A stretch of DNA of 64,000 nucleotides from Stylophora pistillata (taxonomy: Eukaryota), in NCBI RefSeq assembly GCF_002571385.2, contig NW_019217939.1, positions 154,326 to 218,325 of the forward strand, in the 5' to 3' direction. The notes below the pieces were generated by a model. The model was not told the origin of the DNA. It was given only the letters and a program-made list of their open reading frames with translations, and made no database searches. Shown here in pieces: positions 2,816 through 29,384 of this stretch. The number at the start of each line of letters is the position of its first letter. Position 1 is the first letter of the stretch. Position numbers and translations under genes: made by a program.

Positions 2816-3029
2816 ATGGCAGATGTCCAAGAGGATTTTGCAAACTTGTCCCTGAATGAAAAATCAGGAAATAGACTGGAATTGCTGACCGAAATTCAGA
2901 AACAAATTTGTGTTGCAATTCGCTCTCTTGAGGCCGGAAGTGACTGGGTAACAAACGAGCAAGTTCGGCACATCTTACTTCAAGTAAACAAGAATATAGA
3001 TTTGATAAAAGCCTCGTGCAACGATGAAG
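2816..3029 (+). CDS. Kinase-Nudix gene exon 1 (helical N-terminus, MADVQEDFANLSL...)
   Basis: ATG at 2816; G|GTATGC donor at 3030, phase 1, matches exon 2; paralogous exon of the same length at 15241-15454. Confidence 0.75.
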
Positions 3030-6000
3030 GTATGCCTGTCTATAATTTTCATTTGCTTTTCTCTTAGTTTAAGTCCTTTTTACAGTTGAAAACTGAAACT
3101 ATCGTTTCGCACTTCGTATGTTTTACGTGAGGTCTGATTTGAGTGGGTCGCTTCCTTTAAAAGAGGTGGCGAATAGTAAATGCGAGACTTTGCGAGACGA
3201 CGAGACTAGCGTTTTTCTTTGCGAGCCCGAGACATTTTGACTTTTAGATTGCGAGATCGAGACTTCAAAGGGTTTTGAGTGCGAGCGCGAGACGTTCAGA
3301 CTCTTAAATTGCGAGCCCCAGATTTGGTTGAGAGCCATGAGAATGAGCTTGAATGAGCTTGTACAAAAGTCTCACAAAGGATCCTTTTGAGACTTTTGTA
3401 CAAGCTCATTCTAGCTCATTCTCATTTCTCTCAACCAAATCTGGGGCTCGCGATTTAAGAGTCTGAACGTCTCGCGCTTGCACTCAAAACCCTTTGGAGT
3501 CTCGGTCTCGAAATGTAAAAAATAAAAGCTTTTTGTAGATGCAGATAGAAAATTTCTTTAAATTATACATACTATTTGTTCAAATATAAGCATTCTTCTC
3601 TATACTGTTGTGTTTGTTACACTTACAATTAACCTATTGACCCCAAAGAGTGACAAGCATCTAATTTCTCCATACATATGCATTATTACTCCTGAATCAA
3701 ACAGGTAAGGGTCACAAGAATAAAGGATTGAAAAGTTTATCAACTAAAGAATTTCTTGATTGTCAAGCAAATTTCTTCTTGTCAAGACCTTGAAATTGAA
3801 AGATGATATATTCAGTGAGTGACACACATATAGTTATGACCTTCCCATTTCTACTTGTACTTCAGATGCCCTACCTCTGAGCTGTTGGAGACTCTTAGCA
3901 GGCTAGACTGTTTAACTTAAGGTCCGTTGTGATAAACTTCCCACATGGTACTAGGATAGGTTAATGCTGCATGTGAATAGGCCATCTCCAAATTACCTTC
4001 AGCATCTTTTCCATAACAAGGCCTGATGCTCAACCATTCTTGTGAAAATGAGTTTAATTAACATGTGAAAGATAAATTGTAATCATTGATATGAAAGGAG
4101 GAGCACCAGAACTTGCTTTGTAAAATAGGGGCTAAAGGTAATTTGGAAATGGGCAATTACACTTGAGTGCAAAGATAGATGGAAATAAAGATGATAAATG
4201 TAAAGCCTTGTGATTTAAGTGAAAGGTGAATTCACTGATTGACACAGAGAGGATGGAAATGTTTGGAGAACGGTTTGGAGAATGTGCATTCTGATGTTTG
4301 GGTGTAAAGGGATCGCTAACAATAATTATTGCATGACTCGGGCAGTCAGAGGGCCAATAACTAAAATCAACCAATCAAAATGCTCTATTGCCGGTCCAAT
4401 ATTCTCTAAGTATTGGACCGGGCACTGTCCCGAATGGTCCCAAATGATACCGCACTTGTGTCCCTTTGAACTTCAGTCGTATAATGAATCTCTTATTAAC
4501 CAAGCTTGCTCAGGACCATACTGGAAGAATATCAGCCCTCAGTCTTTTTTGTACGGACCTCGCTGCGCTCAGTCCGTACTGTCAAGACGTCAGGCCAATA
4601 TTCTCCCAGTACGGCCCTCGCACTTGGTTAATAAGATATATTTATGGCTGCTAATCTATATTTGATGTATATTAATAAAACTGGTGGGTACTTTTGAAAA
4701 AATTTCCTTGCAGAGTCATCTGGTTTGAGGACTGTTGGTAAAGTAAGCCAGGGTGAATTACAAGCATGGGAGAGGCTGGGGGAAGGTGGATTCTCAAGTG
4801 TGTATAAAGCTAAGCTTAAAGGGAATGATGTTGCCGTCAAAGTGTTAAAAAATCTTAAAGAAACAAGACCTCTGCTTACAGAAGGAAATCTGTTGAGGTG
4901 GCTTTTAAACTTGACTGTGTTTGCCCTTCTTGAATAAATATATCTTATTAGACATTTTTTTGTGTAGTATTGCTGAGTATTTTTATGAGTTGTGCCGTAT
5001 TGACGAACCCGTAGGGTGAGTCAAAATACAAATAACAAGTAAAAATACTCAGCAATACTACACAACAAAAAGTCTAATAAGTTATTTATTATCCAACACA
5101 CCAAACTGTTATTTCAGTGCAGGCGAATTTTGTGGATATTTATTTACGGGGAGTGTGTGACAGAAGTATGCGAAGCAGAATGGAATTGGCGCGTTGTCAT
5201 GTTACTGTTTCTTTTTTCTTCAATAAATGAAGAAATTTCCAAGTCATCTAGCTGTTTTTCTTTGTTCAATTCATCTAATAAACGGATGTATATTTGCCAG
5301 CCATTCTGACTCTTCGTCGTCAGAAATATGATTCAAATCGTCCGCCATTTTTTTTTCTTAACTACAATTCAATTCTTTGCTTGTGCGATGCGAGAAAACC
5401 TGTTTAACGCGGTACAAATACCGCGTGATATTTGTACTCGTCTATGGCATTATTTGTACTCTACGAAGTGTAGTTGGATAATAAATGTCAATATTATTAA
5501 CTTAATAAAAGACTGGTAACCTTTCCAGGAAACTTTTGGTGAAGTTGAGTGGTTTGACTAATGCCAATTCTATTTCAGTCTTCCTTATGCTTTTAGTCTA
5601 TACTCGAGCTAAGAGTGGCTCACCCTGAGCTGGAGCTAATGTCCTGGCCCTGGCTGTTCGAAGGATGGATAACGCTATACACTGGATAAATCTCTATCCG
5701 GTGGATAGCACAGTACATTTTGGTAACACTTATCCGCTGGATAGCGATTTATCCATTGGATAGGTTTATCCGCCCTTTGAACAACCGGAGCCTGGTTCTT
5801 AAAACATGAAGTGACTAGGGCTGGATTGTTCAAAGCTGGGTTAAGATAACCTAGGGTTAGCATGAAATTTGACTTTAGATCTCAAAGCTTTAAAAGAAAG
5901 TTCAATTTGACTATTTTTGTCTGCAATTTGATGATTGGATGCTCTCGAAAGAATAGGGAAAATTATCCCCAAAAGGTTCTTGAACAGAGAAATAAGGAAA

Positions 6001-9000
6001 CCTGGATTACAATTTAACCCTGGGTTAGTGCTAATCGGCCTTCAAACGACTGGACCTAGTAGTATAGGCACTCCCCTGGATGGGATACGAGTCCATTGCA
6101 AGCCTTTATCAGGCTTCCTTGAGAATTTGCTGCTACCCATTTAACAGTAATCCTGGTTGGAGGGATTAGCACTGTGATAGTTAAGTGTTTTGCTCATTCC
6201 AAGAACAAAACACACTGACCTCTCGACTTGACTTCAATGTATAATTCCATTAGGCCTTCCCTTAACTATTCTTTTACTTATTATAATTTATTATATTGAT
6301 TATTGCAAACTGGATCATCAGATAAAGCAATTCAAGAGTTTTCATTTGCTTAGTCATCATGGTCATGAGTTATAATGTACCTGCATGTGTGTGCATGAAG
6401 ACGAGCTAAACGAAAGTGAAATGACCAAATTCCTCTTTGATGGTTTTCTCAATTGTTTCTTTAACCTCATTACTCGAATGAATCCCCAAAACCAAGGAAA
6501 TATACGAAGGACAAATGTAACTACCAAGCAGTTGACCAAAACAATTTCATTACACAGAACATTCCTGAGTGACAGCAGTCATGTGACCATAAAAGGCGGG
6601 AAAACAAAAAACAGGGAACCCAGCTAACAGAAAGTGGTTTTGTTGTATAACATTCTATTTATTCTTACAAAATAATGCACACTTGTGGAATTATTGTTAA
6701 ATATCGGGCCCCAGTTGCTCAAAGGATGGATAACACTATACACTGGATAAATAATCCTATCTGCTGGATAGCGCAGTACATTTTGGTAACACTTATCCAC
6801 TGGATAGCAATTTATCTGTTGGTTAGTGTTATCCGCCCTTTGAACAACTGGAGCCAGATTATTAAAGTTATAATTCTCAGTTACGTTTACTCAAAGTTAA
6901 AGACATTTTTGGAAAAATTAATTCCGTTGCTTAGTTAAAATTATTTTTATGATACACAGAGATCTTCGGCATGATAACATTATTGCATTTAGAGGAATGA
7001 ACATTTTGGAGAGAGATGTCTCATTTGAGAAATTCACCCTCAAAGCAGGATGCCCATTTCTGGTCATGGAATACATTCCTAAGAACTTGTATAGATTTGT
7101 AGAGGATCACAAAACTCCAGAGTCTCAGGGACTTCCTAAAAGTCAAGTGTGGACCATTGGTAGAGGAATGGCCAATGGTTTGATGTACCTACACAGTTTA
7201 GATCCTCCAATAAGCCACAGAGATTTAAAGCCTGACAATATACTGGTGAGATTCCAGCAGAAATCATCTGTTTTAGTAAGAACTTCTATCAGAAAAAAAT
7301 CATGCTTGTATTTTGAAGACAACAGCTTTATATTATATGTATTAAAAGAAAAGGAAATGATAAATTAAAGATATATTAAAATAAATGAAAATGAAAAAAA
7401 ATATGAGCAAATGAGTTAAATTTGACTGACTTATAATTAGTTGGATGTGTGATGTACAGCAATTAAAGAACCAAGGGTTTATAAAGTTACTGGATTTTTA
7501 TTAATGTTTCAAGAACTTTTTGCAAAAGATGAAAAAAAAAAAAGTCATTTCAAAAAAGATTGATAAACCTTGATGCAAGACCATCCTGTTTTTATGCAAT
7601 TAGATTAAGCAGCAAATTCATTCAATTCGTCATTCACTACTTCTTGAGGACACTCAATAAATACCATCATTAGTATTCCTTTATATCTATTAAATTATGT
7701 TATCCAGTTGGAAATCAGAAGCTTACGAGTGAAACTAGCAGACTTTGGTTTATCAAGAACAGTTGAGAGGAGTGGTAATGATCTGTCCTTGTTCCATGCA
7801 CGGTGGACAGCACCTGAAGTGTGGGATGATTACATCATAGATGATGAGTATAATATAGAAGGTAAAACTTAAAGGCATGAAAATTGTTTTGGAATTAACA
7901 ATTAATTAGATTTCACATAGTTGTCAGTTAGTCCAGTTATCGATTCTAATTACAGATGAGGTTATTACCACATTTTTCTATTTTTGGAATTTCTTGAGAT
8001 CTCTTAAAATCTGATACTCTCAAGAAGTTTGAAATAATTTTTCATCGAAAATTCTTTAAAAAGTTCTTCAACTACCAGGCATATAGGCAGGGGGCAGTTT
8101 CATTACAATGTTAATAAATTTAAACTAGTTGTAAATGCTGTAAAGATAAATAATTTATTGATTGGAAACTGAAGGAATCAATAAATCAAGTAATTAATAA
8201 ATTTATAAATGAGAGGGTCTTTGAAGTATATTATTCATATAAGATGTCATCATGTAGGTAAGTGAATTATTGGAAAAAGTAAGGAATTGGCTTCTTCAAC
8301 CCGATTGAGTGTGTTAGCATTTGAAATGAACTATTCTTTTCTTCATCCAGAACTGACCGACACAACGGAAGACAAAACTGTTGAAGAAGAGTGCATAAGC
8401 TTGGATGATGAGCTTTTCTATCTGCGCGCTGATGTCTACTCGTATGCTCAAGTGGTAGCCTACACCTTGACAGGCAACATGCCGTGGCAGGGTCGGAACT
8501 CTGTCAGTGTACAGGGGATTCAAAACAACTTGATAAAGAAGGAGGACAGAGTGGAGTTGCCTGAAGAACTTGGCGGTGTACTGAGGAAAGTTGTTGAGGA
8601 CTGTCGTTTGGAAAATCCTGCGAAGAGACCCACTGCTGACCAATTGGTTTTGGAGTATTTTAGTGGTAAAGTTTAAAAAAAAAGTTCTATTTGCTCTCAC
8701 TGGCAGTTGTTGCTTGCAAAACTTCTTCACTGTCTTTACGTATTCGTCATATACTGGATTAGATCAATTTTGTTGCCTGGCTCAAAATTTTTGTGTGTGT
8801 GTGTGTGTTTTTTTGTTTAGTTCTATTTCTTTTGTTGTTCTGTTTGTTATTTTGTTTGTTTTGTTTTGTTCTGTTTTCAGTTTTTACCTATCTCACGCAT
8901 ACATCCCTTTCATCATCTAAACAATAATTTTTTAACCTTTAACACGTACTTAACCGAGAGCTGTTAAAAGAGAGCTGAAAAAGTGTAATTTCAAGATACT

Positions 9001-12000
9001 AATTTATGCCATTTATAACGGCCTTTTTTTGTTTAGGTGATGTCAACCCGTACCAAACTGAAGCCAGAAGTGCTGAGTTCTTCTCCTGCGGGTTCCTACA
9101 GAACACTTATATCTTTGTTGCTGAGAGCTTAGTGGACGAGGTAATGGAGTAGGAGTAATTGATGTTTTTTTGTGTCGGTGCCTAATTAGGCACCTACCAT
9201 TTTTATCAGTGGTACATGATATCCTCATATCTTTGTATTTAGTAGAAGAGCAAATGATGGGTTGGTACTTTCAAAGTCTGGCCTTGGTGTATCAAATTAA
9301 CTGTTGTGAACTCGATTTGGACAAAGTTCATTTTCAAGTTGGCCAATTTGTGTTTTTTTTTTGGTTTTTTTTTTTCCAACACTGAGCATTTCTTCGCCCA
9401 TGAGGGAGTTTGAAGCGAGCCGGCGAGAGGTCTGCGAGGGGTCTGGAACTATTTTTTATTGGTTTCCAACTGCAGACCCGCTTTGATTCATATCTCAAAG
9501 TTTCTCGCGGGCAAAGAGACGCTCTTTCCACGGCGCCAATAATGAAGGCCTGCTCGTAAGCTACCTTACTGTTATCTGCCCCATCTTATCCTATTTGTGT
9601 CTTGATTGATTTGTCCTCTTGAACCAACAGTCCAGTGAAGGGTATTTTAAGACATCAGTTCGTCCGCACGGATTCCCCCCGGAGTGTCTGTTGTGCGCGG
9701 TAGAGGTCGGCAACGAGGAGTACAACGACGTGCCAAAAGAGTGGGTTTACGAACAGAAGTACAGAGAGCATTAGGGGCACTTCAGGCAGGTATATACGAA
9801 GACCAGAGTTTGGCATATGATTTTTTTTTGTATAATAAAATATAGGGAAGCGAAAAGACTCAGCTTCAAACACAGGAAATTTGAAGGACGAGTTCATCAA
9901 AGTAAACTAAAGGAAACAGTCACATGTAAGATTTAAAGGAGTGACCACCCCATTATTTCTCCTTACCTCATCACTTTTGAAATAAACATCAAGGTCATGA
10001 GTGTTAAGGAGAGTGACTTAAAATAAGTATTTAGAAATTTCGAGAATGCTTTGAGCCTCCAGTGAAACTATCTGGAACCTTTTTTGGATTTTGTTGTTGT
10101 GATGTGGTGACATCAGGGTGGTTATGTTGTGGGCTTCTGGAATGTTCCGGAATGCTTTGAGGATTTATGTGGAGACTCGGTCGGCTACTGTTATCGAGAG
10201 TAAGCTCTACCAAGAGAGAAAACTGTTGTAGAAGACTGTTAATTAATTTCAAAGTACTTTAAAGAAAACTGTGGGTTTGTGCAGTGGTGAGCTAAGATGT
10301 AGTTTATAGAGGGCTCATTAGTAAGTTATTGAAAATAACTACAGCTGTAATGTCTATACGAGTCGCTCCTAAGTAAGAATCATGATTGCACGTAAGTAGT
10401 TGAGCTTATAGGATTATAGTGTTTTTCTGGCGATTGAATTATACCGTAACATGAGACTTAAGAAGCTCCGCATTGTTTGAAAAAAATTCTTCTTTTCATT
10501 ATCCTCTTTAAGGACGCGAAATTCCAAGGCCGACTCGTGATACATCCTAGTGTTCTTACGGCTGATAAGATGTTAAATTGAACTTTTAATAGAGATTTCT
10601 AAACAATGCTTCAATAAACGCAGGAATTTCTCGTACCCACTACATCCTATAGAGAAGCTAGGTGACATTACAAAACAAGTTGGTATTTTAATGTTTAAAA
10701 ACATTTCATGTTGTGTGGTAGCATGCGATCTGTCGTTTCAAGAATTTTGGTTTTTGCATTCGGGTAAAAAAGCGCACATGTTTGATGGTTGAGGGGGATT
10801 CGGACCCAGTCCCTGGATCCGCCACCGCTCTTTACTAATTTTCTTTCACGTGTAGGCTGCTATCGACAAAAAGATTGAAGACAATCCTGCCATTGCCCTC
10901 AAAACATTGATCACCTCCCGGGAGGAGGAAGAAGAGAGCCAAGAAATACAACTGATGTTCGGACAGTCAACCTACTGTCATCATAGAGCCGTTCGGGAGA
11001 TCTGGAGGAACCTAGAAGACTCTAAAAAAAGAGAGTTTGTTGTGTGTAAGACTACGGTTCATCCGGTGTTCAGCACATCTTTTGGCCTCCATGTTGCTGT
11101 GCTAACTGCGGACAAACCTCAGAAATTCATCTTTGCTAGAAGGGCCAATAGAGGTACCTAGTTAGTTCACACACTCTTTTTGGCCTTTGTAAAGATTTTT
11201 GTAACTATTCACGAGTTTAGAATTTGAGTTAAAGGATCGTGAAATCTCAGCTAAATTTAAGGATGCTGCACATTTCAGTGACATCTAACCCTGATACTTC
11301 CCCATTAAAATCCCTATAATATTTTTTTTATGCCACTATATGGCTGGGTCAGAAGGAGGTAGTTTAGCAACGGCCAATAACACCGCTGATCTTTGCCGAA
11401 ACCCTTCGTAACTATGATTATGCGTCGATCAATTCGAAGCTTAGACATCCCCCTTGGGGGGCAACAATTGTGTTCAAATCCTCCACTCCGTTTTTTTGTT
11501 AAGGAAAAATCAGCGACGGCGACTTTCTACACTCGGACCAGGCCTTAAAGCCCTAGACCTTGCAGACCTTTTCTTCTTAGCCAGTTGCTCGCGAAAGTGA
11601 ACGAAGTGACGAGTGAGTTTTTTTAATGCATTGCAACGAGTGAATAAAAATCGTCCGTGCGCACTTTCTATGGTATGTTTTTATTTCATACATACTGAGA
11701 TTTTTTCTTACAGACCGGCACATTTGAAAGATTGGAAGCAAACGACTGTGAAAATACATCTTTTGTCCAATCAGAGACACGAACGGTAGTACTTCACAGC
11801 ATGAATCTCAATATGTATGAAACCAAAATTTGGTATTATCAACTGTGTTGATGATGTGAAGTGAATTAGGCACCGTAAAGAGATTCTAAAGCTTACGTTT
11901 CGAGCGCCAATTCGCTCTGGCCAGTTTACATAACATGTCTCACATTGCCATTTTTTTGCCTAAGCCCCGTTCTTCTATTCTTCGTACAAATGCAGATAAA

Positions 12001-12625
12001 CCCTCAAACTTTAATCAGGAAATTTCATGAGTGTAGACACAACGATTAGCGATTAGGCGTTCATAAATTTTCTTTTTTCTTTCCATGTTACTTTTTAGAG
12101 GGAATGGCAACCCCAGGAAAATTTACCTGCGGGGCTGTGGAAAGTGCCTCAGTCAAGGACTACATTTACAAAAACGGCAAATCTTACGTAGATCTGATCC
12201 AAACCGCTGCGCGAGGACTGGAAGAAGAGCTGCGAGTAGAGTTGAAAGATAGGGACATCGAGGCTCTTTGCCTCACAACAGTTTACCTCAAGTTCGACAC
12301 ACATGAGTGGGGTTGCTGTGGTTACGTAGACCTGTCGGATGAACGAGTGGCTTCCGAGCGACGACTGACGTTCGAGCAACTCGGCTCTCGGTTCACGACG
12401 GGTCCTAAAGATAAGTTTGAGCACGAAGAAGTAGTGGCTGTTGACTTCGAACTGTCGCGGATGGTGGAGTTCGTGCGAGAGAACTACGAAGATTTTGCTA
12501 GCTCGGCCAAGCTAGTAGTGGTGAAGGTTTTGCAGTCGTTTTTCGGAGTCGCTGCCGTGGAAAGAGCTTTTCGCGTTTATCTAGAAGATGGAGATGATAC
12601 TTTACCAAAGCAGATTCCATCTTGA
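2816..12625 (+). CDS. Multi-exon gene: N-terminal helical segment + TKL-like Ser/Thr protein kinase + C-terminal Nudix-hydrolase-like domain (9 exons; in-frame TAG in exon 7)
   Basis: Exons 2816-3029, 4714-4897, 6960-7245, 7708-7861, 8351-8665, 9037-9140, 9631-9789, 10856-11153, 12099-12625. All introns are GT-AG with matching phases; total 2241 nt = 746 codons + stop. Kinase motifs: [35 protein letters not shown], RPTA. Nudix-like motifs: ARR..PGK...GAVES...AARGLEEELRV. Confidence 0.8.
3242..3520. repeat. About 280-bp near-perfect palindrome (foldback/MITE-like insertion) in intron 1
   Basis: Arms are reverse complements centred on GGATCC 3379-3384 with almost no spacer; GCGAGAC sub-repeats extend left to about 3180; not seen in the duplicate gene copy. 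Confidence 0.85.
4328..4640 (+). mobile_element. Non-autonomous interspersed element family A, copy 1
   Basis: Highly similar to 16105-16416 and 38259-38570 with unrelated flanks; 3' half is an imperfect palindrome (CTTATTAACCAAGC...CTTGGTTAATAAG). Confidence 0.85.
4714..4897 (+). CDS. Kinase exon 2 (subdomains I-III)
   Basis: ttgcag acceptor; [25 protein letters not shown]...LLTEGNLLR; AG|GTGGCT donor. Confidence 0.9.
4938..5485. mobile_element. Composite hairpin + inverted-repeat non-autonomous element
   Basis: Inverted arms 4944-4985 / 5040-5081, then TTATTATCCAAC (about 5086) ... GTTGGATAATAA (about 5473). Confidence 0.6.
5645..5795. mobile_element. MITE-like element with TGGATA-rich inverted repeats
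   Basis: Termini GGCCC..TGTTCGAAGGATGGATAA / TTATCCGCCCTTTGAACAACCGG; second copy at 6707-6856. Confidence 0.7.
5817..6060. mobile_element. MITE-like element (related terminal inverted repeats)
   Basis: GGATTGTTCAAAGCTGGGTTAAG ... CTAATCGGCCTTCAAACGACTGGACCT termini; internal TAACCCTGGGTTA palindromes. Confidence 0.5.
6707..6856. mobile_element. MITE-like element, second copy of the 5645-5795 family
   Basis: CCAGTTGCTCAAAGGATGGATAAC ... GTTATCCGCCCTTTGAACAACTGG inverted termini. Confidence 0.72.
6960..7245 (+). CDS. Kinase exon 3 (subdomains IV-VIb)
   Basis: LRHDNIIAF...LVMEYIP...[29 protein letters not shown] donor at 7246. Confidence 0.92.
7708..7861 (+). CDS. Kinase exon 4 (subdomains VII-VIII; absent from the ORF track)
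   Basis: Manual translation LEIRSLRVKLADFGLSRTVERSGNDLSLFHARWTAPEVWDDYIIDDEYNIE; ccag acceptor, G|GTAAAA donor. Confidence 0.92.
8351..8665 (+). CDS. Kinase exon 5 (acidic insert + subdomains IX-XI)
   Basis: ...RADVYSYAQVVAYTLTGNMPW...VVEDCRLENPAKRPTADQLV; splice phases match both neighbours. Confidence 0.9.
9037..9140 (+). CDS. Kinase-Nudix gene exon 6 (linker)
   Basis: tttag acceptor; open frame DVNPYQTEARSAEFFSCGFLQNTYIFVAESLVDE; GAG|GTAATG donor. Confidence 0.75.
9631..9789 (+). CDS. Kinase-Nudix gene exon 7 (phase 0-0; in-frame TAG at 9772-9774)
   Basis: aacag acceptor; GC-rich coding-like SSEGYFKTSVRPHGFPPECLLCAVEVGNEEYNDVPKEWVYEQKYREH*GHFRQ; CAG|GTATAT donor. Confidence 0.65.
10856..11153 (+). 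CDS. Exon 8 (N-terminal part of Nudix-like domain)
   Basis: tgtag acceptor; AAIDKKIEDNPAIALKTLITSREEEE...SFGLHVAVLTADKPQKFIFARRANR; G|GTACCT donor. Confidence 0.8.
12099..12625 (+). CDS. Exon 9, terminal (Nudix-box-like helix)
   Basis: ttttag acceptor; GMATPGKFTCGAVES...DLIQTAARGLEEELRVEL...HEWGCCGYVDL; TGA at 12623-12625. Confidence 0.82.
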
Positions 12626-13994
12626 ACAAATTTAGTGATTAATGCTTTACTTTTCTTTCTCTTCTCAGTGAGAGCCTGACTTAAAATTACTGTAGTCTCT
12701 GTTTGGAAAGAATAGCCTTGCAAGGGTACATTTATAAAGCATATTAGGAACTTGGGACTCGGTTGGGTCCCCAACGAGCAGTTTGTATTTCATTGTTAAC
12801 TCTGCCTTTATTGACTCAAGACTTAAGTTCATAGTATGTCCCATTCTAGCTAATCATGCAAGTGCAACAACCGTGTAAACATGTCTTTTGTTGTGTTTTC
12901 ATTTTGTTTTTTCCTTGATTACCAAACAAATCCCCTTTACCACCACCTTAAAAAATACTACTACCGTAACACATGGTCGCCTATTATGATTTTTTTTTAA
13001 CAACAACAACCTTTATGTATTGTAATTTTTAATGACTAATGACTATTTTAATGATTGACTGATGTGAATGATTTCCATATAACCCTATACATAATTATGC
13101 ATTCCATTTCATAAAGACTTAAAGACTAAAGTTTTCTTTGCAACACTCCACGCATAATTTATGTATGGGGTTGTATGGAAATCTTGCCGAAATCATGGTT
13201 GTGATTTGAATATCTGAGACGACAAAGGCAATTATACGAACACCCTTCGAGGCATTCGGAATCGTAGTAACCATTCTTTTTTAGTAATTAACCCAATGAA
13301 AAAAATTATGATACACAGGCGGATCATACGAGTATTGTCTTCGTTCATACATCGATTGATCAACTAAGCGATTTCAACAGCTTCCGTTGATCGCGAATGC
13401 ACATTCGATCGCTTCATCGAGAGGAAAAGGCGACAATTTGAAGCCTTCCCTTATGATTTCCTAACCGAAATGCTAATAATAAATGTACTTCCAACGTTCG
13501 AATTCACGCCATGAATTATCAGCCAAGACTCGGCAGTGTTACTCAAGCGTAAAAAGTATATTAATATTACCAAAATATAAGAACAAGGAGATATTAAGAA
13601 TGCTCAGTGATTTATCACTCACCAAAACCTCTATCACAGATTCCCAAATCTGGTCGGCTTAACTTAGCCAAAAAGGAAAAAAGAAAATATGCAAAGGACA
13701 CAGTTTACTTTCGATCTGGAACTGTCATACATTAGTACATAATATGTGATTGGTCGTTAGCCAAAGTCCCGATTTGAAAAAGCCTCAGAGGAGGCGCCAA
13801 TGGTAACGAGTGTATTATCCCTAACAGATTTTGGGGGAACCCATAAAGCAGCTCTCTCATCGCCGTGTTGAATGTTTCCACAGAATGTCCATGAAATATG
13901 TCACCTGAGCTTAAAGATAGATAGATAGTTTATTATGATTAAAATCGCAGCCAAAAGCTGAATTAGATTAATCGTTACAATAGTAAAATCTAAT

Positions 13995-14042
13995 GATTAT
14001 AATAATTATATATAATTATATATAATTATATAATAATTATAA
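13995..14042. repeat. (TATATAATTA)n tandem repeat in the LINE 3' UTR
   Basis: About 4 copies visible. Confidence 0.8.
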
Positions 14043-14792
14043 GAAAAACGTACACAAATTAACTACAATTACTATATATAAATGTTTTCATGAGTCTCTT
14101 CGTCTTAGCCAGAGTGAACATTAAATTTCCTCTTTTCCCTCAGATTGAGTTCACAGTTGTTATTACTGTTCACAGTTGTTATAACTGTCTTAGCAAGAGC
14201 TTATACAGTTTATGGTCTGAGTTACAAGAGATGGAATCAAAAAGCTTAGTTGTGATAGACTGCCTGCGTTGGGAGAGCGTCTCCAAGTTGGTTTGATTTA
14301 ATGCGTCGCTATATGGAACAAACGGAAAAATAAATCGCATGGCGAGTTTCTGTAGCTGTTCTAAACTCAACAGATAAGTATGAGGGAAGCGCGTTGTGAA
14401 ACACCGGGCATGCGTATTGCATTACTGGGCGGATACAAGTCATGTAAAAGATTAGCAGGTCTTTGGCGGGAATATTCGCTCTCTTCAGTTGTTTAAGAAA
14501 ATATAATCGACTCGCTACTTTTTTACTTATTTCAGCAACATGGCGGTTCCACCGAAGGTTGGAAGAAATGTTCAGCCCTAACAACTTAACAGTAGACGCT
14601 ACCTCTATTGCTTTCCCGTTGATAACAATTGGAGCAAAGTCTGCGGCTGATTTAGCGAACGAAATCCGTAGTTCCTTACATTTCGATTCATTTAGCTAGA
14701 ACTTATTTTGATTAGACTTAGTAATCAGTTCCTCCACATCAGATTGAATACGACTGCCCTCCTTCTTGTAAACACACTCTGCAATATAACAC

Positions 14793-14899
14793 NNNNNNNN
14801 NNNNNNNNNNNNNNNNNNNNNNNNNNNNNNNNNNNNNNNNNNNNNNNNNNNNNNNNNNNNNNNNNNNNNNNNNNNNNNNNNNNNNNNNNNNNNNNNNNN
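14793..14899. other. Assembly gap
   Basis: N run. Confidence 1.
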
Positions 14900-15919
14900 T
14901 CTCTAATTTTCTTGAGAATTGATGGTCGCAAGTATTCCGCAACAACAAACTCCTCCGCCACCTTAGAGAGAACGGGCGTTAACGAGATGGGACGCAGGTG
15001 TTTATTTACGTCCTTATTTGGTTTCTGCTTTGGGATCGGAACGGTATCAGCAGATTTCCAAAAAAGGAGGTAAACGTCTTTCAGCAAAAGAAGTGTTAAT
15101 GATATCAGTTACAGTATTGAAAAAGAGATCAGCATTTTCCTTTAGCAACCATGCTGGAATACCGTCGGGTCCGGACGCTTTCCTAGGGTTGATCGACGCT
15201 AGCTGAAGGTAAACAGCATGCGTAGAAACGCATGTGTGCGATGGCAGATGTCCAAGAGGATTTTGCAAACTTATCCCTGAATGAGATAGCAGGAAATAGA
15301 CGGGAATTGCTGGGCAAAATTCAGAAACAAATTTGTGACGCAATTGGGTATCTCGAGGCCGGAAGTGACTCTGTAACAAACGAGCAAGTTCGACGCAGCT
15401 TACTTCAAGTAAACAAGAATATAGATTCCATAAAAGCCTCGTGCAACGATGTAGGTATACCCGTTTATAATCGTCTTTACTTTCTGCTTTCCATTTTTTA
15501 TTTTTGTTTTTATCTTTTTTTTTTTCAATTGAAAACTGAAACAATGCTTTCGCACTTCGTATGTTTTCTAATTTGTGGGTGGGATCAGTTTGGTCGCTTC
15601 CGTGAAAAGTTTACTTATCAAATAAATAAAACGACAGTCAATCATTTTTTTAGTGTTTCGATCGAAGGACCTGTTGTTGATCTCAGAGAGCTTGATAATC
15701 TGGGTTTTATCAAAGTGTACAGAATGACTACGGCTTTCCAATGGTACAACTCAAATCATGTTGTTCCAATCCTGTTTCTTCAGCCAAACTAAATAAACTT
15801 TTGAGTTTGAAAATAATTCTCTTTCACTGACCTCATTAGTAATAAAGAGGGGGTATCATAAACTTGTTGACAGATGGGTCGTACCTGGTGCATTTTAAAG
15901 CGAAATGCGATAAAGATAA

Positions 15920-15987
<68 letters not shown>

Positions 15988-16054
15988 CAGCCAATATACC
16001 ATAATCTAATATCTGTACATCGTAACATCCGGTCTCTTCTCACGAAATAAAGTT

Positions 16055-16088
<34 letters not shown>

Positions 16089-16104
16089 TTTTAATAAAAC
16101 AATT

Positions 16105-16416
16105 ATTACACGACTCGGGCAGTCAGAGGGCCAATAACTAAAATCGACCAATCAAAATGCTCTATTGCCGGTCAATATTCTCTCAGTATTGGACCGGGCA
16201 CTGCCCCGAATGGTCCCGAATGATACCGCACTTGTGTCCCTTTGAACTTCAGTCGTATAATAAATCTCTTATTAACCAAGCTTGCTCGGGACCGTACTGG
16301 AAGAATATCGGCCCTCGGCCTTTTTTGTACGGACCTCGCTGCGCTCAGTCCGTACTGTCAAGACTTTGGACCAATATTCTCCAAGTACGGCCCTTGCGCT
16401 TGGTTAATAAGATATA
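16105..16416 (+). mobile_element. Family A element, copy 2
   Basis: Direct sequence match to 4328-4640 and 38259-38570. Confidence 0.85.
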
Positions 16417-17403
16417 TATTACGCACAGTGACCACGGAACAAGTAAGTTGAATAACTCTCACTCCTAAATAAATAATAATCTTAATTCGCAGGGGAAGAA
16501 AGCTAAAACAAAGCCATGAACGAAATGTAATATTCGAGGACTTGCAGAAATTGCATTTAAAATCATGACCATCCTGAAATACTCTAGGATACAAAAAAGA
16601 GAACAACAAACAAACATATCAATGAAGTGAGCAAACAACCACATGCGTGACTTCCACGTAATCTAAAATTTCTTATAAGCGTCATTACTGAGTACCTGTT
16701 TTGTGCTAGCGCAAAAGCCGTTCACTAATCTGGCAAGCTTTCTTTTGGTTGATGCTGTTGTTGCCCACATTCGCTTTCTCTGTAATTACATAATGTTTCT
16801 TTACTTCTTTGTTTCGTGCTGCCACATTTGATCTAAATTGGATTATTCACGACTGTCAAAACGGACATAACATGACAAACAAATAATTACAATTTGATAC
16901 CCGTGTTCTTCTCATCGAAAAGACAAAAAAAGATTTTTTTGTATTTCGCGGAGCTTAGAACAATCCATTAAAATGCTTACCCCTTTGGGGGTAGGAGGTC
17001 AAAAAGAACAATACATGCAACTGTTTGGCCTGTTCACGTTTCACAATAATAAAGAAATGCATTTTTTGGTGTGCTTAACAAATGCTGTTCAAAAAAAGAA
17101 AGGTACCAAGAACATTTTACCTTTGTACTCTTGAGGAGGGTGGCATGGACCGTCAAGTGACAAGACCAAAACCAACGACTGCAAACAAGACCATGTGTAA
17201 AAAGTAGTAGCAGAAAGTTTTTTTTTAATTTTTTTTTTCAATGACTGTCACAAAAATATTTACTGCTCCAAGTATTTCCAGTATTGCTCTACAAGCAAAT
17301 GAATAGCGTAAGCCATCAAGAGGTAATTTATCTGTTGAAAACAATAACTAAATGTTCAACAATAGGCCTAAAAGCTTCCAGGAAGTAAGGGAAAGGCATA
17401 TTG

Positions 17404-17594
17404 CATCCCGGTTAGCTCAATGGATAGAGCGCTGGACTGATGTGCGGGAGGTCGAGGGTTCGAGCCCCGGCCGGACCAACACTGAAGGTCTTAAAGTAAT
17501 TGAGAAGAATATGTTGCCTTTCTATAACATCCAGAAATGGTTTAGGAATTCTAGTCTTCTCGGATAGGGACGAATAAATGGAGGTCCCGTCTCC
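17404..17594 (+). mobile_element. tRNA-derived SINE
   Basis: A box TAGCTCAATGG (17413), B box GGTTCGAGCCC (17457-17467); no proper cloverleaf; followed by non-tRNA body GGACCAACACTGAAGGTCTTAAA... Confidence 0.75.
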
Positions 17595-20500
17595 TGCAGG
17601 GTTAGGGGTAGGACGAGATTACTGTGTGATGGATGTCCTCCCCTGGGGAGTTATATTGGTGAGACCACTCGCCACATTTGTACAAGATTCTAAACAATGC
17701 TCTGCGCTTCAAGCAGGAATATACGAGGACCAGAGTTTGGCACATGGGTTTTTTTGTTTTTTTGTTTTTTTTGTTTTTTTGTTTGTACATAGAAGCTAGA
17801 AGATGGGGAAGCGAAAGACACAGCTTCAAACACACGAAATTTCAAGGACAAATTCGTCAAAGTAAACTAAAGGAAACAGTCATATGTAAGATTTAAAGGA
17901 GTGACCACCCCATTATTTCTCCTTACCTCATCACTTTTGAAACAAACATTAATGTCAAGAGTGTTAAGGAGTGTGACTAAAAATAAGTATTTAGAAATTT
18001 GGAGAATGCTTTGAGCTTCCTATGAAACTTTCTGGAACCTTTTTTTGGATTTTGTTGTTGTGATGTGGTGATATCAGGGTGGTCGTGTTGTGGGCTTCTG
18101 GAATGTTCCGGAATGCTTTGTGGATGTATGTGGAGACTTGGTCCACTATTGTTATCGGGAGTAAGCTCTACCAAGAGAGAAAACTGTTGTAGAAGATAGT
18201 CAATTTAAAGGAACTTTGGAGAAAACTGTGGGTTTCTACAGTGATGAGCGAAAATGTAGTTTGTAGAGGGCTTATAAGTAAGTTATTGAAGATAACTACT
18301 TTATCGTCTATCGGAGTCGTTCATAAGGAAAAATATTGCACATAAGTAGCTGAGTTTATAGGATTATAGTGTTTTTCTGTCGGTTGAATTATACCGTAAC
18401 ATGAGAATAAAGAAGCTCCGCACCATTTAAAAAAATTCTTACTTTCATTATAGTTCTCTTTAAGGACGCGAAATTCCAAGGCCGACGCATGTTACGTCCT
18501 AGTGTTCTTGCGGTTGATAAGATGTTAAATTGAACTTTTAATGATGATTTCTCAGTGTCCAAACAATGCTTCAATAAACGCAGGAATTTCTCGTACCCAG
18601 TACATCCCTTGGATAAGCTAGGCAATATTACAAGACGAGCGGGTATTTTAGTGTTTAAAAACATCTCATATAATTATTGCGCAGTAGCATGCGATCTGTC
18701 GTTTCAAGAATTTTTGTTTTTGCATTTGGTAAAAAAGCGCATATGTTTGATGGTTGAGGGAGATTCGGACCCAGTCCCTGGATCCGCCACCGCTCTTTAC
18801 TAATTTTCTTTATTTACGTATGGATCAAAGATAATCCTTCCATTGCCCTTAAAACATTGATCACCTCCCGGGAGGAGGAAGAAGAGAGACAAGAAATACA
18901 ACTGATGTTCGGACAGTCAACCTACTGTCATCATAGAGCCGTTCGGGAGATCTGGAGGAACCTAGAAGACTCTAAAAAAAGAGAGTTTGTTGTGTGTAAG
19001 ACTACGGTTCATCCGGTGTTCAGCACATCTTTTGGTCTCCATGTTGCTGTGCTAACTGCGGACAAACCTCAGAAATTCATCTTTGGTAGAAGGGCCAATA
19101 GAGGTACCTATTCAGTTCACGCACCCTTTTGGCCTTTGTCAAGATTTTTTATAATTATTCACGAGTTTAGAATTTGAGTTAAAGGATCATGAAATCTCAG
19201 CTAAATTTAAGAATGCCGCACATTTTAGTGCCATCTTACCCTGATACTTCCCCATTAAAATCCCCATAATATTTTTTATGCCACTACATGACTGGGTCAG
19301 AAGGAGGTAGTTTATCAAGGCCAATAACAACGCTGATCTTTGCCAAATCCCTTCATAACTATGATTAGGCGTCGATCAATTCGAAGCTTCGACATCCCCC
19401 ACCCAGGGGCAAAAATTATGTTCAAATCCCCCGCTCCATTTTTTTGTTAAGGCAAAATCAGCGACGGCGTCTTTCTACACATGGACCAAGCTTTAAAGCC
19501 CTAGACCTTGCGGACCTTTTCTTTTGAGCCATTCGCTCGCGAAAGTGAACTATTGACCATAAGTGAGCTCAACGAACGAGTGAGTCTTTAATGCATTACA
19601 ACGAGTGAATAAAAATCATCCGTGCGCACTTTCTATGGTATGATGTTTTTATTTCATGCATACTGAGATTTTTTCACACAGACAGTCACATTTCAAAGAC
19701 TGGAAGCAAACGACTATGAAATTACATCTTTCTTTCAATTAAGTGACCCGAACGATAGTACTTCCCAGTGTGAATCTCAATATGTATGAAACAAAATTTG
19801 GTTTTATCAACTGTGTTGATGATGTGAAGTGAGTTAGCCCCCGTAAAGAGATTCTAAAGCTTACGTTTCTAGCGCCAATTCGCTCTGGCCAGTTCGCATT
19901 ACATGTGTCAACTTGTGTATAAACCAAAATTGTCTTGTAGCCAAAGGAAGGCCTTCATATTTTGTCTCGCATTGCCCGGCATTTTTTCACTAAGACCCGT
20001 TCTTATATTCTTTATTTTACAAAAACAGATAAATCCTCAAACTTTTATCAGGTAATTACAAGACTGTAGACACAACAATAAGCGATTAGGTGTTCATAAA
20101 ATATTGTTTATTTTTTTTCTTTTCATGTTACTTTTCAGAGGGAATGCCAACCCCAGGCAAGCTTACCTGCGGGGCTGTGGAAAGTGTCTTAGTCAAGGAC
20201 TACATTTATAAAAACGAGAAGCCTTACGTGGATCTGATCCATACTGCTGTGCGAGGACTGGAAGAAAAGCTGCGAGTGGAGTTGAAAGATAGTGACATCG
20301 AGGCTCTTTGCCTCTCAACAGATTACCTCAAGTTCTACACCCATGAGTGGGGTTGCTGTGGTTAGGTTGACCTGTCGGATGAACGAGTGGCTACCGAGCG
20401 ACGACTGACCTTCGATCACCGCGGCTCTCGGTTCACGACGGGTCCTAAAGATAAGTTTGAGCACGAAGAAGTAGTGGCTGTTGACTTCGAACTGTCGCGG

Positions 20501-23144: not shown

Positions 23145-23678
23145 ATGAATTTAAAGAAACTTGAACGTATTTCGCCACCAGTGGATCGATTCTGGAGGCG
23201 AAAGAGAACCCAAACGTGGCCGAATGTTCCGTTATCGGAACTGAGTAAATTAAAGGGATGGAATCTGCTAGCGACGATTCCCGAAAGCGATGCAGTAAAA
23301 TCTTCGGAAAAGAGTTCGGGGCGACGAGCTCGCGCCAAAACTGTTTCAGACCTCCGAGTGCGTATTCAAGATGAGCAACTGAGAAAGATTATCTTGGAAG
23401 TGCTTACGTCGTATTTGTCACAATTTTCAGAATATAATCATATTCTTTTCGGACGGCTTGGCCCCTTGCTAAGTGAATTGATAAAAGTTCGTGTCGAGGA
23501 GTGCATTGAGGAACGATGTAAAATAGTCTCACAGGTTTATATCGGAGCTGTTGTTGGTGAAGGAATAGACGCGGCAACACAATGTCTATGGACGCCACAT
23601 TGTGATAAATATGCCACGGCTAGTTATGGTACTCAGTTTTTATTTGCTGTGGGAATCGTGTTCGTTGTACAATTATAA
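23145..23678 (+). CDS. Tctex-1 domain-containing protein (dynein light chain Tctex-type family, TCTEX1D-like), single coding exon, 177 aa
   Basis: C-terminus LSELIKVRV...RCKIVSQVYIG....GIDAATQCLW...DKYATASY....LFAVGIVFVV fits the Tctex-1 pattern; first ATG at 23145. Confidence 0.8.
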   Translation: MNLKKLERISPPVDRFWRRKRTQTWPNVPLSELSKLKGWNLLATIPESDAVKSSEKSSGRRARAKTVSDLRVRIQDEQLRKIILEVLTSYLSQFSEYNHILFGRLGPLLSELIKVRVEECIEERCKIVSQVYIGAVVGEGIDAATQCLWTPHCDKYATASYGTQFLFAVGIVFVVQL

Positions 23679-28160: not shown

Positions 28161-29384
28161 ACTACGTAGTTCTTTTTTATATCCTTGCGTGACAATGCCT
28201 ATTTTCGACCATTATCGAATACCTGAGAAAATACACGCGCATTAACTAGTCAAAAATCTATTGTTTATTACTCTAATTAATTAAGAAAACTATTTGAATT
28301 AGACAGATGAATAACGAAAGCTCATTTCCTTTCGGGTTTTCAAGATGATTATAATTCTTCTGAGATTCTTGTGGGAAAACTTATAAACTATGATGGCACG
28401 TGATTTACAAACTATGTGGGCGCGACGTTGCGTCAGCAACCTCATGTGACTCCGATTCACGGGAACGAAGTAGACCAAGATAGTGATTCTGGAAAGCTGT
28501 TTACAAAGGCCAATGGGTTAGAAAAATGTTAAAAGTTTTCGTGTTTAGTTTTAAAGAAATGGTTTCGGTTTGTGTGTTTACGCGAGACAATTTCCATAAA
28601 AGGGATTAGGGAGATGTGAGGCGGTAGATTCGACACTATGACACACGAATAAAAGCTTACCAAAACAGCTGTAATTAAAATAACACGCACTCTTCAGTGT
28701 TCTTCATGAAAAGAAAGAAATACTCTCTTAGTGCATTATTTAAGCCGGTGCAGTACTCGATTTTAAGTTTTCTCAAGAACCAAACATTTACATGGGCAAT
28801 TAACATCGTTTATCTATGAGAGAACAGGAAATTCACGCGTTTCCTCGCATAACGTAGTGTTTGTCAATCGGAGGACTGTTTAAGGAAGTGTAGCACGTAG
28901 TACCCTTTTGTGCATTATATCGATTTTATAAGTGGCTAGACGGTAGATATGAATCAGGTTTTATTGTCCGTGCGAATTCTCCCAGATGAGCGGTGTTTGC
29001 CAAGTCGCTTTTGTTATGATAGGTGTGAAAAAGTTAAAATCCCTTTACTAATTATAGTTCTTTACTATGATTTGTCGAAAACTCGAGATCCAGATCAACA
29101 TAGATTGATACCTATCAAGAACAAAGCGTACTAAATTGACACCTAACTTGGTAAGTCCCGCCTTCTAATCGCGACAAACGGACTTGTGACCAAAGAATTT
29201 CCGATGTCATCGATTAGAGAACTTACGAGCCAATCAAGATACGCGGTTTTGATTTGTAACAATCTTCTGTGGCATAATCGCACATTTAGCTGTTCAGCCA
29301 CTCTCACTTGAAAAAGTAAAGGGACAATGCATTACCCTTAGCCCTGTGAGGCCAGAGAAATTTGATGTTCTCGAAAGGGAAGAT

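What the first reader, a model, noticed from the sequence alone, without database searches (positions are those of the whole stretch)
2816..12625. Protein kinase fused to a divergent, possibly bacterial-type Nudix domain: candidate novel innate-immune effector
Seen: nine GT-AG exons join in one frame, giving a helical N-terminus, a kinase with intact catalytic motifs (VAVK, [11 protein letters not shown], APE) and a C-terminal region of about 330 aa. That region has the Nudix layout: strand HVAVLT, 'IFARR', 'PGKF..G..E', and helix 'TAARGLEEELRV' against the canonical REUxEExGU. Established: Nudix enzymes hydrolyse nucleoside-diphosphate-X substrates (ADP-ribose, RNA caps, ApnA, alarmones), and I know no standard animal kinase family with this architecture. 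Inference: the module, including the upstream 'DNPAIAL...SREEEE...STY' segment and downstream 'HEWG', reminds me of uncharacterised multidomain bacterial Nudix-like proteins rather than animal NUDT enzymes; this is recollection, not a search result. With the promoter motifs and local duplication/decay, it may couple phosphorylation to sensing or destroying a nucleotide signal in cnidarian defence.
Basis: partly seen in the sequence, partly recalled or inferred. Interest (0 to 1): 0.85.

Follow-up and report, generated by a model that had tools for sequence, protein, structure and literature searches.

The report
Kinase fused to NUDT22-like Nudix unit
This coral gene joins an active-looking signalling kinase to a complete copy of an unusual nucleotide-splitting enzyme (NUDT22-like); many marine invertebrates share the fusion, nobody has studied it, bacteria attach the same enzyme module to immune-type TIR domains, and the copy in this reference genome carries a premature stop.

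Summary
The nine-exon gene is real. RNA contigs and reads confirm six GT-AG junctions, and one contig joins a kinase exon to the C-terminal exons. The window is Stylophora pistillata.

One caveat: exon 7 carries an in-frame TAG (codon 467; 9772-9774). Every transcript-derived protein of the species has Tyr there, so this is an allele or an error of the reference. It is not a species-wide pseudogene.

The C-terminal ~340 aa is more than a lone Nudix domain. It is a complete two-domain NUDT22-like unit (AlphaFold2 pLDDT 87; VIA Z 21.9 to human NUDT22 over 270 of 282 residues; next tier Z at most 13.6). Profile homology supports this (E 2e-4; hhalign 92%). The coral also has a true NUDT22, so the fused unit is a paralogue.

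The R-G-L-x-E-E Nudix helix is nearly invariant, and the module is the best conserved part of the protein.

The architecture recurs in cnidarians, molluscs, a hemichordate, amphioxus and a tunicate, all unnamed. Their modules form one clade, which argues against recent transfer. Bacterial relatives carry TIR domains in defence-like loci.

An immune role and the substrate are inferred, not shown. The scan's only earlier notes lie on this same window.

The parts
2816..3029 (+). Exon 1. ATG at 2816, with an alternative in-frame ATG at 2765. It encodes two long N-terminal helices (residues 3-40 and 44-74).
   Evidence: Frame and donor GT. Transcript-derived proteins start at either ATG. Helices in the AF2 model of the intact allele.
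4714..4897 (+). Exon 2. Start of the kinase N-lobe: Gly-rich loop and VAVK (Lys114).
   Evidence: Pfam Pkinase piece. Its end equals the loose end seen at 6958 in RNA.
6960..7245 (+). Exon 3. Kinase, through the catalytic loop HRDLKPDN.
   Evidence: Pfam Pkinase E 2.9e-11. RNA joint 7245/7708.
7708..7861 (+). Exon 4. DFG and APE motifs.
   Evidence: Pfam. RNA joints on both sides.
8351..8665 (+). Exon 5. Acidic insert and kinase C-lobe.
   Evidence: Pfam. RNA joints.
9037..9140 (+). Exon 6. Linker and start of the NUDT22-like N-terminal domain, from about residue 392.
   Evidence: RNA joints. The VIA alignment to NUDT22 starts at residues 86-95 of the proxy model.
9631..9789 (+). Exon 7 (159 nt, phase 0/0). 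Part of the NUDT22-like N-terminal domain. It is included in the RNA.
   Evidence: RNA joints 9140/9631 and 9789/10856; no exon-skipping joint is listed.
9772..9774 (+). In-frame TAG (codon 467) of the reference allele. It is Tyr in all transcript-derived proteins of the species and in other corals.
   Evidence: for the codon; for Tyr elsewhere.
10856..11153 (+). Exon 8. End of the NUDT22-like N-terminal domain and the first strands of the Nudix domain.
   Evidence: RNA joints. Profile alignment to NUDT22 over this stretch.
12099..12625 (+). Exon 9. Nudix domain proper and TGA stop at 12623-12625. The 3' UTR continues beyond 12700.
   Evidence: RNA joint 11153/12099, and a contig that runs about 300 nt past 12700. 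73 homologues at E <= 1e-3 in 1.84 billion representatives.
12212..12232 (+). Nudix-box helix core R610-G-L-E-E-E-L616. Glu614 is invariant; Arg610 and Glu615 are nearly so.
   Evidence: Alignments. It lies on helix 604-616 of the model.
13202..20992 (+). Partial decayed tandem duplicate. It holds promoter plus exon-1-like (15241-15450), exon-8-like (18824-19129) and exon-9-like (20111-20662, with an in-frame TAG) parts. Exons 2-7 are absent.

Best explanation
Shown. This is a single, spliced, expressed Stylophora pistillata gene of 746 codons, or 763 from the upstream ATG. It has three parts. The first is an N-terminal pair of long helices. The second is a TKL-like Ser/Thr protein kinase with every catalytic motif intact. 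The third is a complete two-domain NUDT22-like Nudix unit, from about residue 392 to 735. That unit is a distant paralogue of the coral's own NUDT22. The reference assembly carries a nonsense allele (TAG467) that cuts the protein inside the NUDT22-like unit. Other individuals of the species express the intact form. The same architecture is inherited across marine invertebrates. The NUDT22-like unit is the most conserved part and keeps the metal-binding Arg/Glu/Glu of the Nudix helix.

Inferred. The unit binds, and probably hydrolyses, a nucleoside-diphosphate-X compound. An NDP-sugar fits NUDT22; an ADP-ribose-type product fits the TIR partners. This is coupled within one polypeptide to kinase signalling. 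Either the ligand state gates the kinase, or the kinase controls removal of the nucleotide. Bacteria fuse the homologous unit to TIR domains in defence-like loci, so a role in stress or innate-immune nucleotide signalling is the leading guess. No data here test it.
For: Gene structure and single transcript.

Species and alleles: PFX25231.1 and XP_022791284.1 match the window, and ten transcript-derived proteins at 98.2-99% identity all carry Tyr467. These sit on contigs of 2-3.7 kb, too short to hold the 9.8-kb gene unspliced.

Kinase: Pfam hits. Nearest solved chains are CTR1 (E 2.4e-22), Roco4, RIPK3, ZAK and MLK4. Motifs are conserved across 40 homologues.

Fold: AF2 of the Acropora orthologue fragment has pLDDT 87.4. 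Foldseek puts NUDT22 first at E 4e-11. VIA gives Z 21.9, rmsd 3.7-3.9, 270-276 residues aligned of 282-291, against at most 13.6 for all other Nudix folds. The full-length intact Stylophora allele gives the same secondary structure.

Sequence homology to NUDT22: profile E 2e-4 and hhalign 92%, E 6e-7. A separate true NUDT22 sits on contig C19.

Constraint: identity between Stylophora and Nematostella is 81% in the Nudix domain and 56% in the kinase; against amphioxus it is 75% and 39%. Of six listed RNA variants downstream of the TAG, five are synonymous.

Bacterial relatives: a Rubrivivax MAG protein has a TIR (PADLOC PDC-S66, E 3e-56) plus the module, followed by a TIR-TM gene (E 1.8e-54). 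A second TIR-plus-module protein was found in another genome. The module is rare, in 3 of 401 Pseudomonadota genomes. Atlas structure neighbours include TIR_2+Hexapep+GMPPB_C and HTH fusions.
Against: No biochemical, expression-response or genetic data exist for any member. The substrate is unknown.

The Nudix box is not canonical. The Glu after Arg is Gly. The G..E part lies about 23 residues, not 7, before the helix. In corals the box Gly is Arg. Pfam NUDIX does not hit. The unit could therefore be a non-catalytic binder.

The full-length model has pTM 0.50, so no fixed contact between kinase and Nudix unit is predicted.

The allele in this window cannot make the fusion protein. The bacterial TIR loci are candidate defence systems, not proven ones. 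NUDT22 itself is a metabolic enzyme (pyrimidine salvage, PMC10101856), which fits a housekeeping reading equally well.
Confidence: 0.6

Rival explanations
1. The NUDT22-like unit is catalytically dead and serves only as a ligand-binding or protein-binding regulatory domain of the kinase. Human TRPM2's NUDT9H domain and the Nudix-fold protein TIRR/NUDT16L1 work this way.
For: The box departs from the consensus (Glu to Gly after Arg, a long insertion, Gly to Arg in corals). Pfam NUDIX gives no hit. TIRR and Syndesmos are among the fold matches.
Against: Arg610, Glu614 and Glu615 of the helix and Glu586 of the GAVE strand are invariant or nearly so across animals and bacteria. Such retention is typical of a retained metal site. 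Human NUDT22 is an active hydrolase (its activity is stated in PMC10101856), although it is reported to lack a conventional box (PMC5688067).
Confidence: 0.25
2. The gene has a housekeeping metabolic role. A kinase-regulated nucleotide-sugar pyrophosphatase would tune UDP-sugar or pyrimidine pools, with no link to immunity.
For: The closest characterised relative, NUDT22, hydrolyses UDP-glucose and feeds pyrimidine salvage (PMC10101856). The family is inherited vertically and is single-copy in this genome. The Nudix domain is strongly conserved.
Against: The coral already has a true NUDT22. The family is missing from the vertebrate, arthropod and nematode hits returned. That patchiness is more typical of immune genes than of core metabolism. 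The bacterial homologues are rare and fused to TIR.
Confidence: 0.3
3. In this species the locus is a dying pseudogene, and the downstream Nudix exons are untranslated remnants.
For: There is an in-frame TAG at codon 467 in the window. A decayed partial duplicate lies next door. The reference haplotype has three further private amino-acid changes: H432, S500 and R623.
Against: All transcript-derived proteins of the species carry Tyr467 and a full 746- or 763-codon frame. Variants downstream of the TAG are almost all synonymous. Exons 8-9 are fully open. Orthologues are intact in Pocillopora, Porites, Acropora and beyond.
Confidence: 0.05
4. Kinase and Nudix parts are two separate genes, wrongly joined.
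For: RefSeq annotates a kinase-only product of 483 aa. Depth over exons 8-9 is higher than over the kinase exons in one run.
Against: One RNA contig spans exons 5 to 9, and every junction between them is seen in two or three independent studies. More than 35 full-length orthologues have the same order. The RefSeq product simply ends at the TAG.
Confidence: 0.02

Closest known systems
Human NUDT22 (UDP-glucose/galactose pyrophosphatase; PDB 5LF9, 5LOR, 5LOU)
   Same: Both domains of its 'unique' fold are reproduced: an N-terminal beta-rich domain plus a Nudix domain (Z 21.9, 270 of 282 residues). Profile-level sequence homology is detectable. Neither has a conventional Nudix box (for NUDT22: PMC5688067).
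   Different: Only 13-14% identity. It is a paralogue, since the coral has its own NUDT22 on another contig. Here the unit is the C-terminal part of a kinase. The helix keeps Arg and two Glu in canonical register. The substrate is untested.
TRPM2 channel with C-terminal NUDT9H Nudix domain, including the Nematostella orthologue (PMC4917252)
   Same: An animal signalling protein with a whole Nudix enzyme unit fused at its C-terminus. There the unit binds or hydrolyses ADP-ribose and modulates the output domain.
   Different: The output there is an ion channel, not a kinase. The Nudix unit is NUDT9-type, not NUDT22-type. There is no homology beyond the superfamily.
Bacterial TIR-plus-module proteins (Rubrivivax MAG JALHOU010000048; PADLOC candidate PDC-S66 TIR) and TIR_2+Hexapep+GMPPB_C+module clusters
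   Same: They share the homologous NUDT22-like module, with the same invariant Arg/Glu/Glu, at the C-terminus of a signalling or effector domain.
   Different: The N-terminal partner is a TIR, or a transmembrane helix or HTH, not a kinase. The module clade is separate from the animal one. The defence function is only a candidate.
TKL-group kinases (CTR1/Raf-like, Roco4/LRRK-like, RIPK3, ZAK, MLK)
   Same: They are the best sequence matches of the kinase domain. The catalytic motifs are intact.
   Different: The matches are weak (E 1e-22 to 1e-14 over about 180 residues), so orthology to a named family is not shown. None of those families carries a Nudix unit.

Membership tests
Nudix superfamily | Alpha/beta/alpha Nudix fold | tested here: met
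   The AF2 model (pLDDT above 90 over the domain) matches dozens of Nudix structures at Z 10-13.6 and NUDT22 at Z 21.9.
Nudix superfamily | Nudix box GX5EX7REUXEEXGU | tested here: inconclusive
   The helix part is kept as R-G-L-x-E-E-L-(G/R)-U on the predicted helix. The G..E part is present but lies about 23 residues upstream. The Glu after Arg is Gly.
Nudix superfamily | Match to Pfam PF00293 above the gathering score | tested here: not met
   No hit for exons 8 and 9 at E <= 1, nor for full-length orthologues at E <= 0.01. Only one distant homologue reaches E 0.008, below the cut-off.
Nudix superfamily | Metal-dependent hydrolysis of an NDP-X substrate | not testable with these tools
   Needs an enzyme assay.
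NUDT22 family | Two-domain NUDT22 fold (N-terminal domain plus Nudix domain) | tested here: met
   270-276 residues aligned of 282-291, rmsd 3.7-4.0, Z 21.2-21.9. Foldseek target TM 0.72.
NUDT22 family | Detectable sequence homology to NUDT22 | tested here: met
   The profile of kinase-less homologues finds NUDT22 as the top PDB chain, E 2e-4. hhalign against the coral NUDT22 exon gives 92%, E 6e-7.
NUDT22 family | Orthology to NUDT22 | tested here: not met
   A separate gene on contig C19 matches human NUDT22 at E 1.2e-24. The fused unit is only 13-14% identical.
NUDT22 family | UDP-glucose/UDP-galactose hydrolase activity | not testable with these tools
   Needs an assay.
Eukaryotic protein kinase (TKL-like Ser/Thr) | Pkinase domain with Lys (VAVK), HRD, DFG and APE | tested here: met
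   Pfam hits on exons 2-5 and on orthologues up to E 2.8e-40. Motif table. Nearest chains are TKL kinases.
Bacterial TIR defence candidates (PDC-S66 / Thoeris ThsB-like) | TIR domain | tested here: not met
   The coral protein has no TIR. Only its bacterial module homologues do.

The most novel reading that the evidence does not exclude
The NUDT22-like unit is an ancient conflict-system module shared by bacteria and animals. It would sense or destroy a nucleotide-sugar or ADP-ribose-derived immune messenger. Bacteria would wire it to TIR NADases, and marine invertebrates to a RIPK/TKL-like kinase. That would make this family a so far unrecognised nucleotide-sensing kinase of invertebrate innate immunity.
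Probability: 0.25. Interest if true: 0.85.

Novelty: new variant of a known kind. Interest (0 to 1): 0.6.

Why it matters
Both domains belong to known superfamilies. Their fusion, however, is a conserved and expressed protein family that databases list only as 'uncharacterized' or under borrowed kinase names. It spans cnidarians, molluscs and invertebrate deuterostomes. No paper on it was found in the held library.

It gives NUDT22, an outlier human Nudix enzyme with a fold called unique, a large set of relatives in animals and bacteria. It also links that fold to TIR-containing candidate defence loci.

If the unit senses or degrades a nucleotide signal, the family would be a new example of immune nucleotide signalling shared by bacteria and animals. 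This could be tested in Nematostella, which has an orthologue.

For genome annotation, both public Stylophora models of this gene are wrong. One is truncated at the TAG and the other skips exon 7.

Tried and rejected
No orthologue DNA could be fetched, so no dN/dS was computed.
- The search for related loci with alignments A2 and A3 failed for lack of a conserved stretch. A single protein worked.
- The profile A1, which included the kinase tail, found only kinases in the PDB. A kinase-less profile was needed.
- A profile of the exon-9 region alone found nothing significant in the PDB. It gave only sub-threshold alignments of the helix to ADP-ribose pyrophosphatase and NUDT7.
- Pfam, NCBIfam and PADLOC have no model for the module.
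- A 30-nt loose end at 10922 in RNA contigs maps to another contig (C48). It abuts the low-complexity Glu-rich codons, so I read it as a contig chimera and did not pursue it.
- The careful phylogeny did not finish in the time allowed. The quick tree was used. It is rooted at the midpoint only, and several bacterial rows have long branches.
- Literature searches for the locus names, for kinase-Nudix or TIR-Nudix terms, and for Nudix+kinase+Nematostella found nothing relevant.
- One search lists no variant at 9772-9774, but its table is incomplete: 31 rows are hidden. The contig pieces over exon 8 each carry one more difference than the table lists, which fits the unlisted S500R. It therefore cannot show whether those RNA samples carry TAG or TAY.
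- The joined nine-exon model was assembled only inside local scripts, for frame bookkeeping and comparison with fetched proteins, with X at the stop. It was not sent to any search or folding tool. Those tools received single exons by reference or database proteins (P0092, P0203). The N runs in the window were left alone.

Full report
**What is in the sequence.**
Six-frame reading and splice-site checks give nine exons. They are 2816-3029, 4714-4897, 6960-7245, 7708-7861, 8351-8665, 9037-9140, 9631-9789, 10856-11153 and 12099-12625. The seven boundaries from the donor at 7245 onward were checked directly and all carry AG/GT. Together the exons make 2241 nt in one continuous frame. An in-frame ATG 17 codons upstream, at 2765, is used by some public models. 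Pfam recognises protein-kinase pieces in exons 2-5 and nothing in exons 8 and 9.

**Transcript evidence.**
I laid two poly-A RNA-seq contig sets from different studies, a third contig set and one raw-read run on 6900-12700. They show GT..AG joints at 7245/7708, 7861/8351, 8665/9037, 9140/9631, 9789/10856 and 11153/12099. One 827-nt contig runs from kinase exon 5 through exons 6, 7 and 8 into exon 9. Raw reads support five of the six joints. A loose end at 6958 equals the end of exon 2. No joint that skips exon 7 is listed. The 'two separate genes' refutation therefore fails: kinase and C-terminal exons are on one mRNA.

**The stop codon.**
Exon 7 is 159 nt in phase 0/0 and contains TAG at 9772-9774, which is codon 467.

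The window is Stylophora pistillata:
- GenBank PFX25231.1 equals the model minus exon 7.
- RefSeq XP_022791284.1 is 100% identical over 466 residues and ends at the TAG.

Ten transcript-derived proteins in the same 90% cluster have lengths of 598, 671, 746 and 763 aa. They are 98.2-99% identical to the model and all carry Tyr at 467. They also all have Gln432, Arg500 and Ser623 where the reference has His, Ser and Arg. Their contigs are 2-3.7 kb, too short to hold the 9.8-kb gene unspliced. Orthologues in other corals also have Tyr.

Tyr to TAG is a one-base change. The TAG is therefore private to the reference haplotype, or an assembly error, and the species makes the full protein. Of the six variants that one search lists downstream of the TAG, five are synonymous. 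That fits continued translation of this part in the population. cannot say whether its RNA samples carry TAG, because its variant table is truncated.

**The duplicate.**
A partial tandem copy lies at 13202-20992. It keeps the promoter and exon 1, and then intron 7 through the 3' end, at 82-88% identity. It lacks exons 2-7 and has its own TAG in the exon-9 copy. No other copy of exons 8 or 9 was found in the 398-Mb genome.

**What the C-terminal region is.**
A HMMER scan of 1.84 billion representative proteins with exon 9 found 73 relatives. Eight of them, 708-755 aa long, were scanned with Pfam or aligned: all carry the exon-9 region at their C-terminus behind a Pkinase domain.

I folded an Acropora digitifera fragment, P0092. 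It matches residues 333-736 of the model at 72% identity. I used it because the joined window model may not be sent to the tools. With a 64-sequence alignment the result was mean pLDDT 87.4, above 90 over almost the whole module.

- Foldseek against the PDB ranks human NUDT22 first, at E 4e-11 and target TM 0.72. Generic Nudix proteins follow at about 1e-4.
- VIA-align gives Z 21.9, rmsd 3.7-3.9 and 270-276 aligned residues out of 282-291 for NUDT22. All other Nudix folds score 13.6 or less.

So the region from about residue 392 to 735 reproduces both domains of NUDT22, not only its Nudix domain.

Sequence agrees with structure. A profile of 33 kinase-less homologues finds NUDT22 as the top PDB chain at E 2e-4. 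The same profile finds a weak second locus in the coral genome, on contig C19, whose exon matches human NUDT22 at E 1.2e-24. hhalign between the profile and that exon gives 92% probability, E 6e-7. The coral thus has a true NUDT22, and the kinase-fused unit is a distant paralogue.

The full-length intact Stylophora allele, P0203, folds with the same secondary structure. It adds two long N-terminal helices (3-40 and 44-74). Its pTM of 0.50 means no confident arrangement between the domains.

**Active-site features.**
Across 40 full-length homologues the kinase Lys, HRD, DFG and APE are kept, with a few degenerate paralogues. The motif R-G-L-x-E-E-L-(G/R) sits on helix 604-616, in register with REUxEExGU. 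Glu614 is invariant. Arg610, Glu615 and Glu586 of the GAVE strand are nearly so, and the bacterial relatives keep the corresponding residues.

The box differs from the canon in three ways:
- Gly replaces the Glu after Arg.
- About 23 residues, not 7, separate the G..E part from the helix.
- In corals Arg replaces the box Gly.

Human NUDT22 is itself reported to lack a conventional box (PMC5688067), yet it hydrolyses UDP-glucose (PMC10101856; Carter et al. 2018 as cited there). I judge a catalytic unit more likely than a dead one, but this is inference.

**Distribution.**
Full-length relatives occur in the following groups:
- Cnidaria: Pocillopora, Porites, Montipora, Acropora, Orbicella, Nematostella (LOC116619161), Exaiptasia (LOC110254472) and Xenia.
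- Invertebrate deuterostomes: Branchiostoma, the hemichordate Glandiceps and the tunicate Clavelina.
- Molluscs: Mytilus, Pecten, Ylistrum and the chiton Liolophura.

All are 'uncharacterized' or carry borrowed names such as drkD, CTR1 or dlk-1-like. No vertebrate, arthropod or nematode appeared among the hits returned.

In a quick maximum-likelihood tree of the module, the animal kinase-fused sequences form one clade (SH-aLRT 99). Inside it, anemones, robust and complex corals, bivalves and deuterostomes group as the species do. The bacterial TIR-linked sequences form another clade. The tree is rooted at the midpoint only and has long branches among the bacterial rows. This speaks for old vertical inheritance with losses, not for recent transfer into corals.

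The module is the most conserved part of the protein. Between Stylophora and Nematostella, identity is 81% in the Nudix domain and 56% in the kinase. Against amphioxus it is 75% and 39%.

**Bacterial relatives.**
- One distant hit, P0067, lies in a Rubrivivax MAG. It has an N-terminal TIR (Pfam TIR_2 E 8e-21; PADLOC PDC-S66 E 3e-56, ThsB-like) followed by the module. Next come an overlapping 283-aa ORF of unknown family and a TIR-TM protein (PADLOC E 1.8e-54).
- A sample of 401 Pseudomonadota genomes held the module in only three. One of these is again a TIR_2-plus-module protein.
- Other relatives begin with a hydrophobic helix.
- ESM Atlas structure neighbours include large bacterial clusters called Nudix-domain proteins, HTH fusions, and 757-aa TIR_2+Hexapep+GMPPB_C proteins. 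These are leads only.

They are not, however, the closest relatives of the coral gene.

**How it probably works.**
Shown: a helical N-terminus, a kinase that looks active and a conserved NUDT22-like unit in one polypeptide.

Inferred: the unit binds or hydrolyses an NDP-X compound, and this is coupled to kinase output. An NDP-sugar is suggested by NUDT22 and by the GMPPB-like partners. ADP-ribose-type molecules are suggested by the TIR partners. TRPM2 with its NUDT9H domain, which is also present in Nematostella (PMC4917252), is a precedent for a Nudix unit regulating a fused signalling domain.

An immune role is suggested by four things: the TIR fusions, the rare and patchy bacterial distribution, the TKL/RIPK3-like kinase and the taxonomic patchiness in animals. 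A metabolic role is not excluded.

**Novelty and verdict.**
No curated family model (Pfam, NCBIfam, PADLOC) covers the module, and no paper in the held library describes the fusion. The domains are known kinds and the architecture is new to the literature, so I class it as a new variant of a known kind.

Its interpretation needs three corrections: the module is NUDT22-like, not bacterial-type; the family is ancient and widespread, not coral-specific; and the immune role is untested.

**Limits.**
- The joined exon model was never sent to a search or folding tool. Single exons by reference, or database proteins, were used instead.

Noticed in passing
window 29346-30164 (+) and 56623-57201 (+): Two open frames encode SIX-class homeodomain proteins: SIX1_SD E 2e-48 and 6e-48, each followed by a Homeodomain. 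This is a linked pair of Six genes about 27 kb apart, downstream of the kinase-Nudix gene.
   Followed up: partly
window 23118-23675 (+): An open frame with a Tctex-1 dynein light-chain domain (Pfam E 1.2e-17).
   Followed up: partly
G000:C19:265115-265654 (L016:1309-1848): First coding exon of the coral's true NUDT22 orthologue (phmmer against human NUDT22, E 1.2e-24). Its later exons were not traced.
   Followed up: partly
L006:6389-9560 (Rubrivivax MAG JALHOU010000048): A three-gene block: TIR plus NUDT22-like module, an overlapping 283-aa ORF with no family, then a TIR-TM protein. It looks like a candidate defence operon.
   Followed up: partly
window 11556-12048 (intron 8): RNA depth of 34-45 with many loose ends at 11664-11706. 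It probably reflects an expressed repeat or transposon fragment present elsewhere in the genome.
   Followed up: no
window 10922; G000:C48:88779-88808 (L003): RNA contigs of two runs switch at 10922 to a sequence that maps to contig C48 with one mismatch. The switch abuts the Glu-rich low-complexity codons, so I take it for an assembly chimera.
   Followed up: partly
window 9664-9681: Three sites in exon 7 (9666, 9669, 9681) each show two different alternative bases among RNA samples. All three are third codon positions, and 9669 gives His432Gln. This is unusually dense multi-allelic variation.
   Followed up: partly
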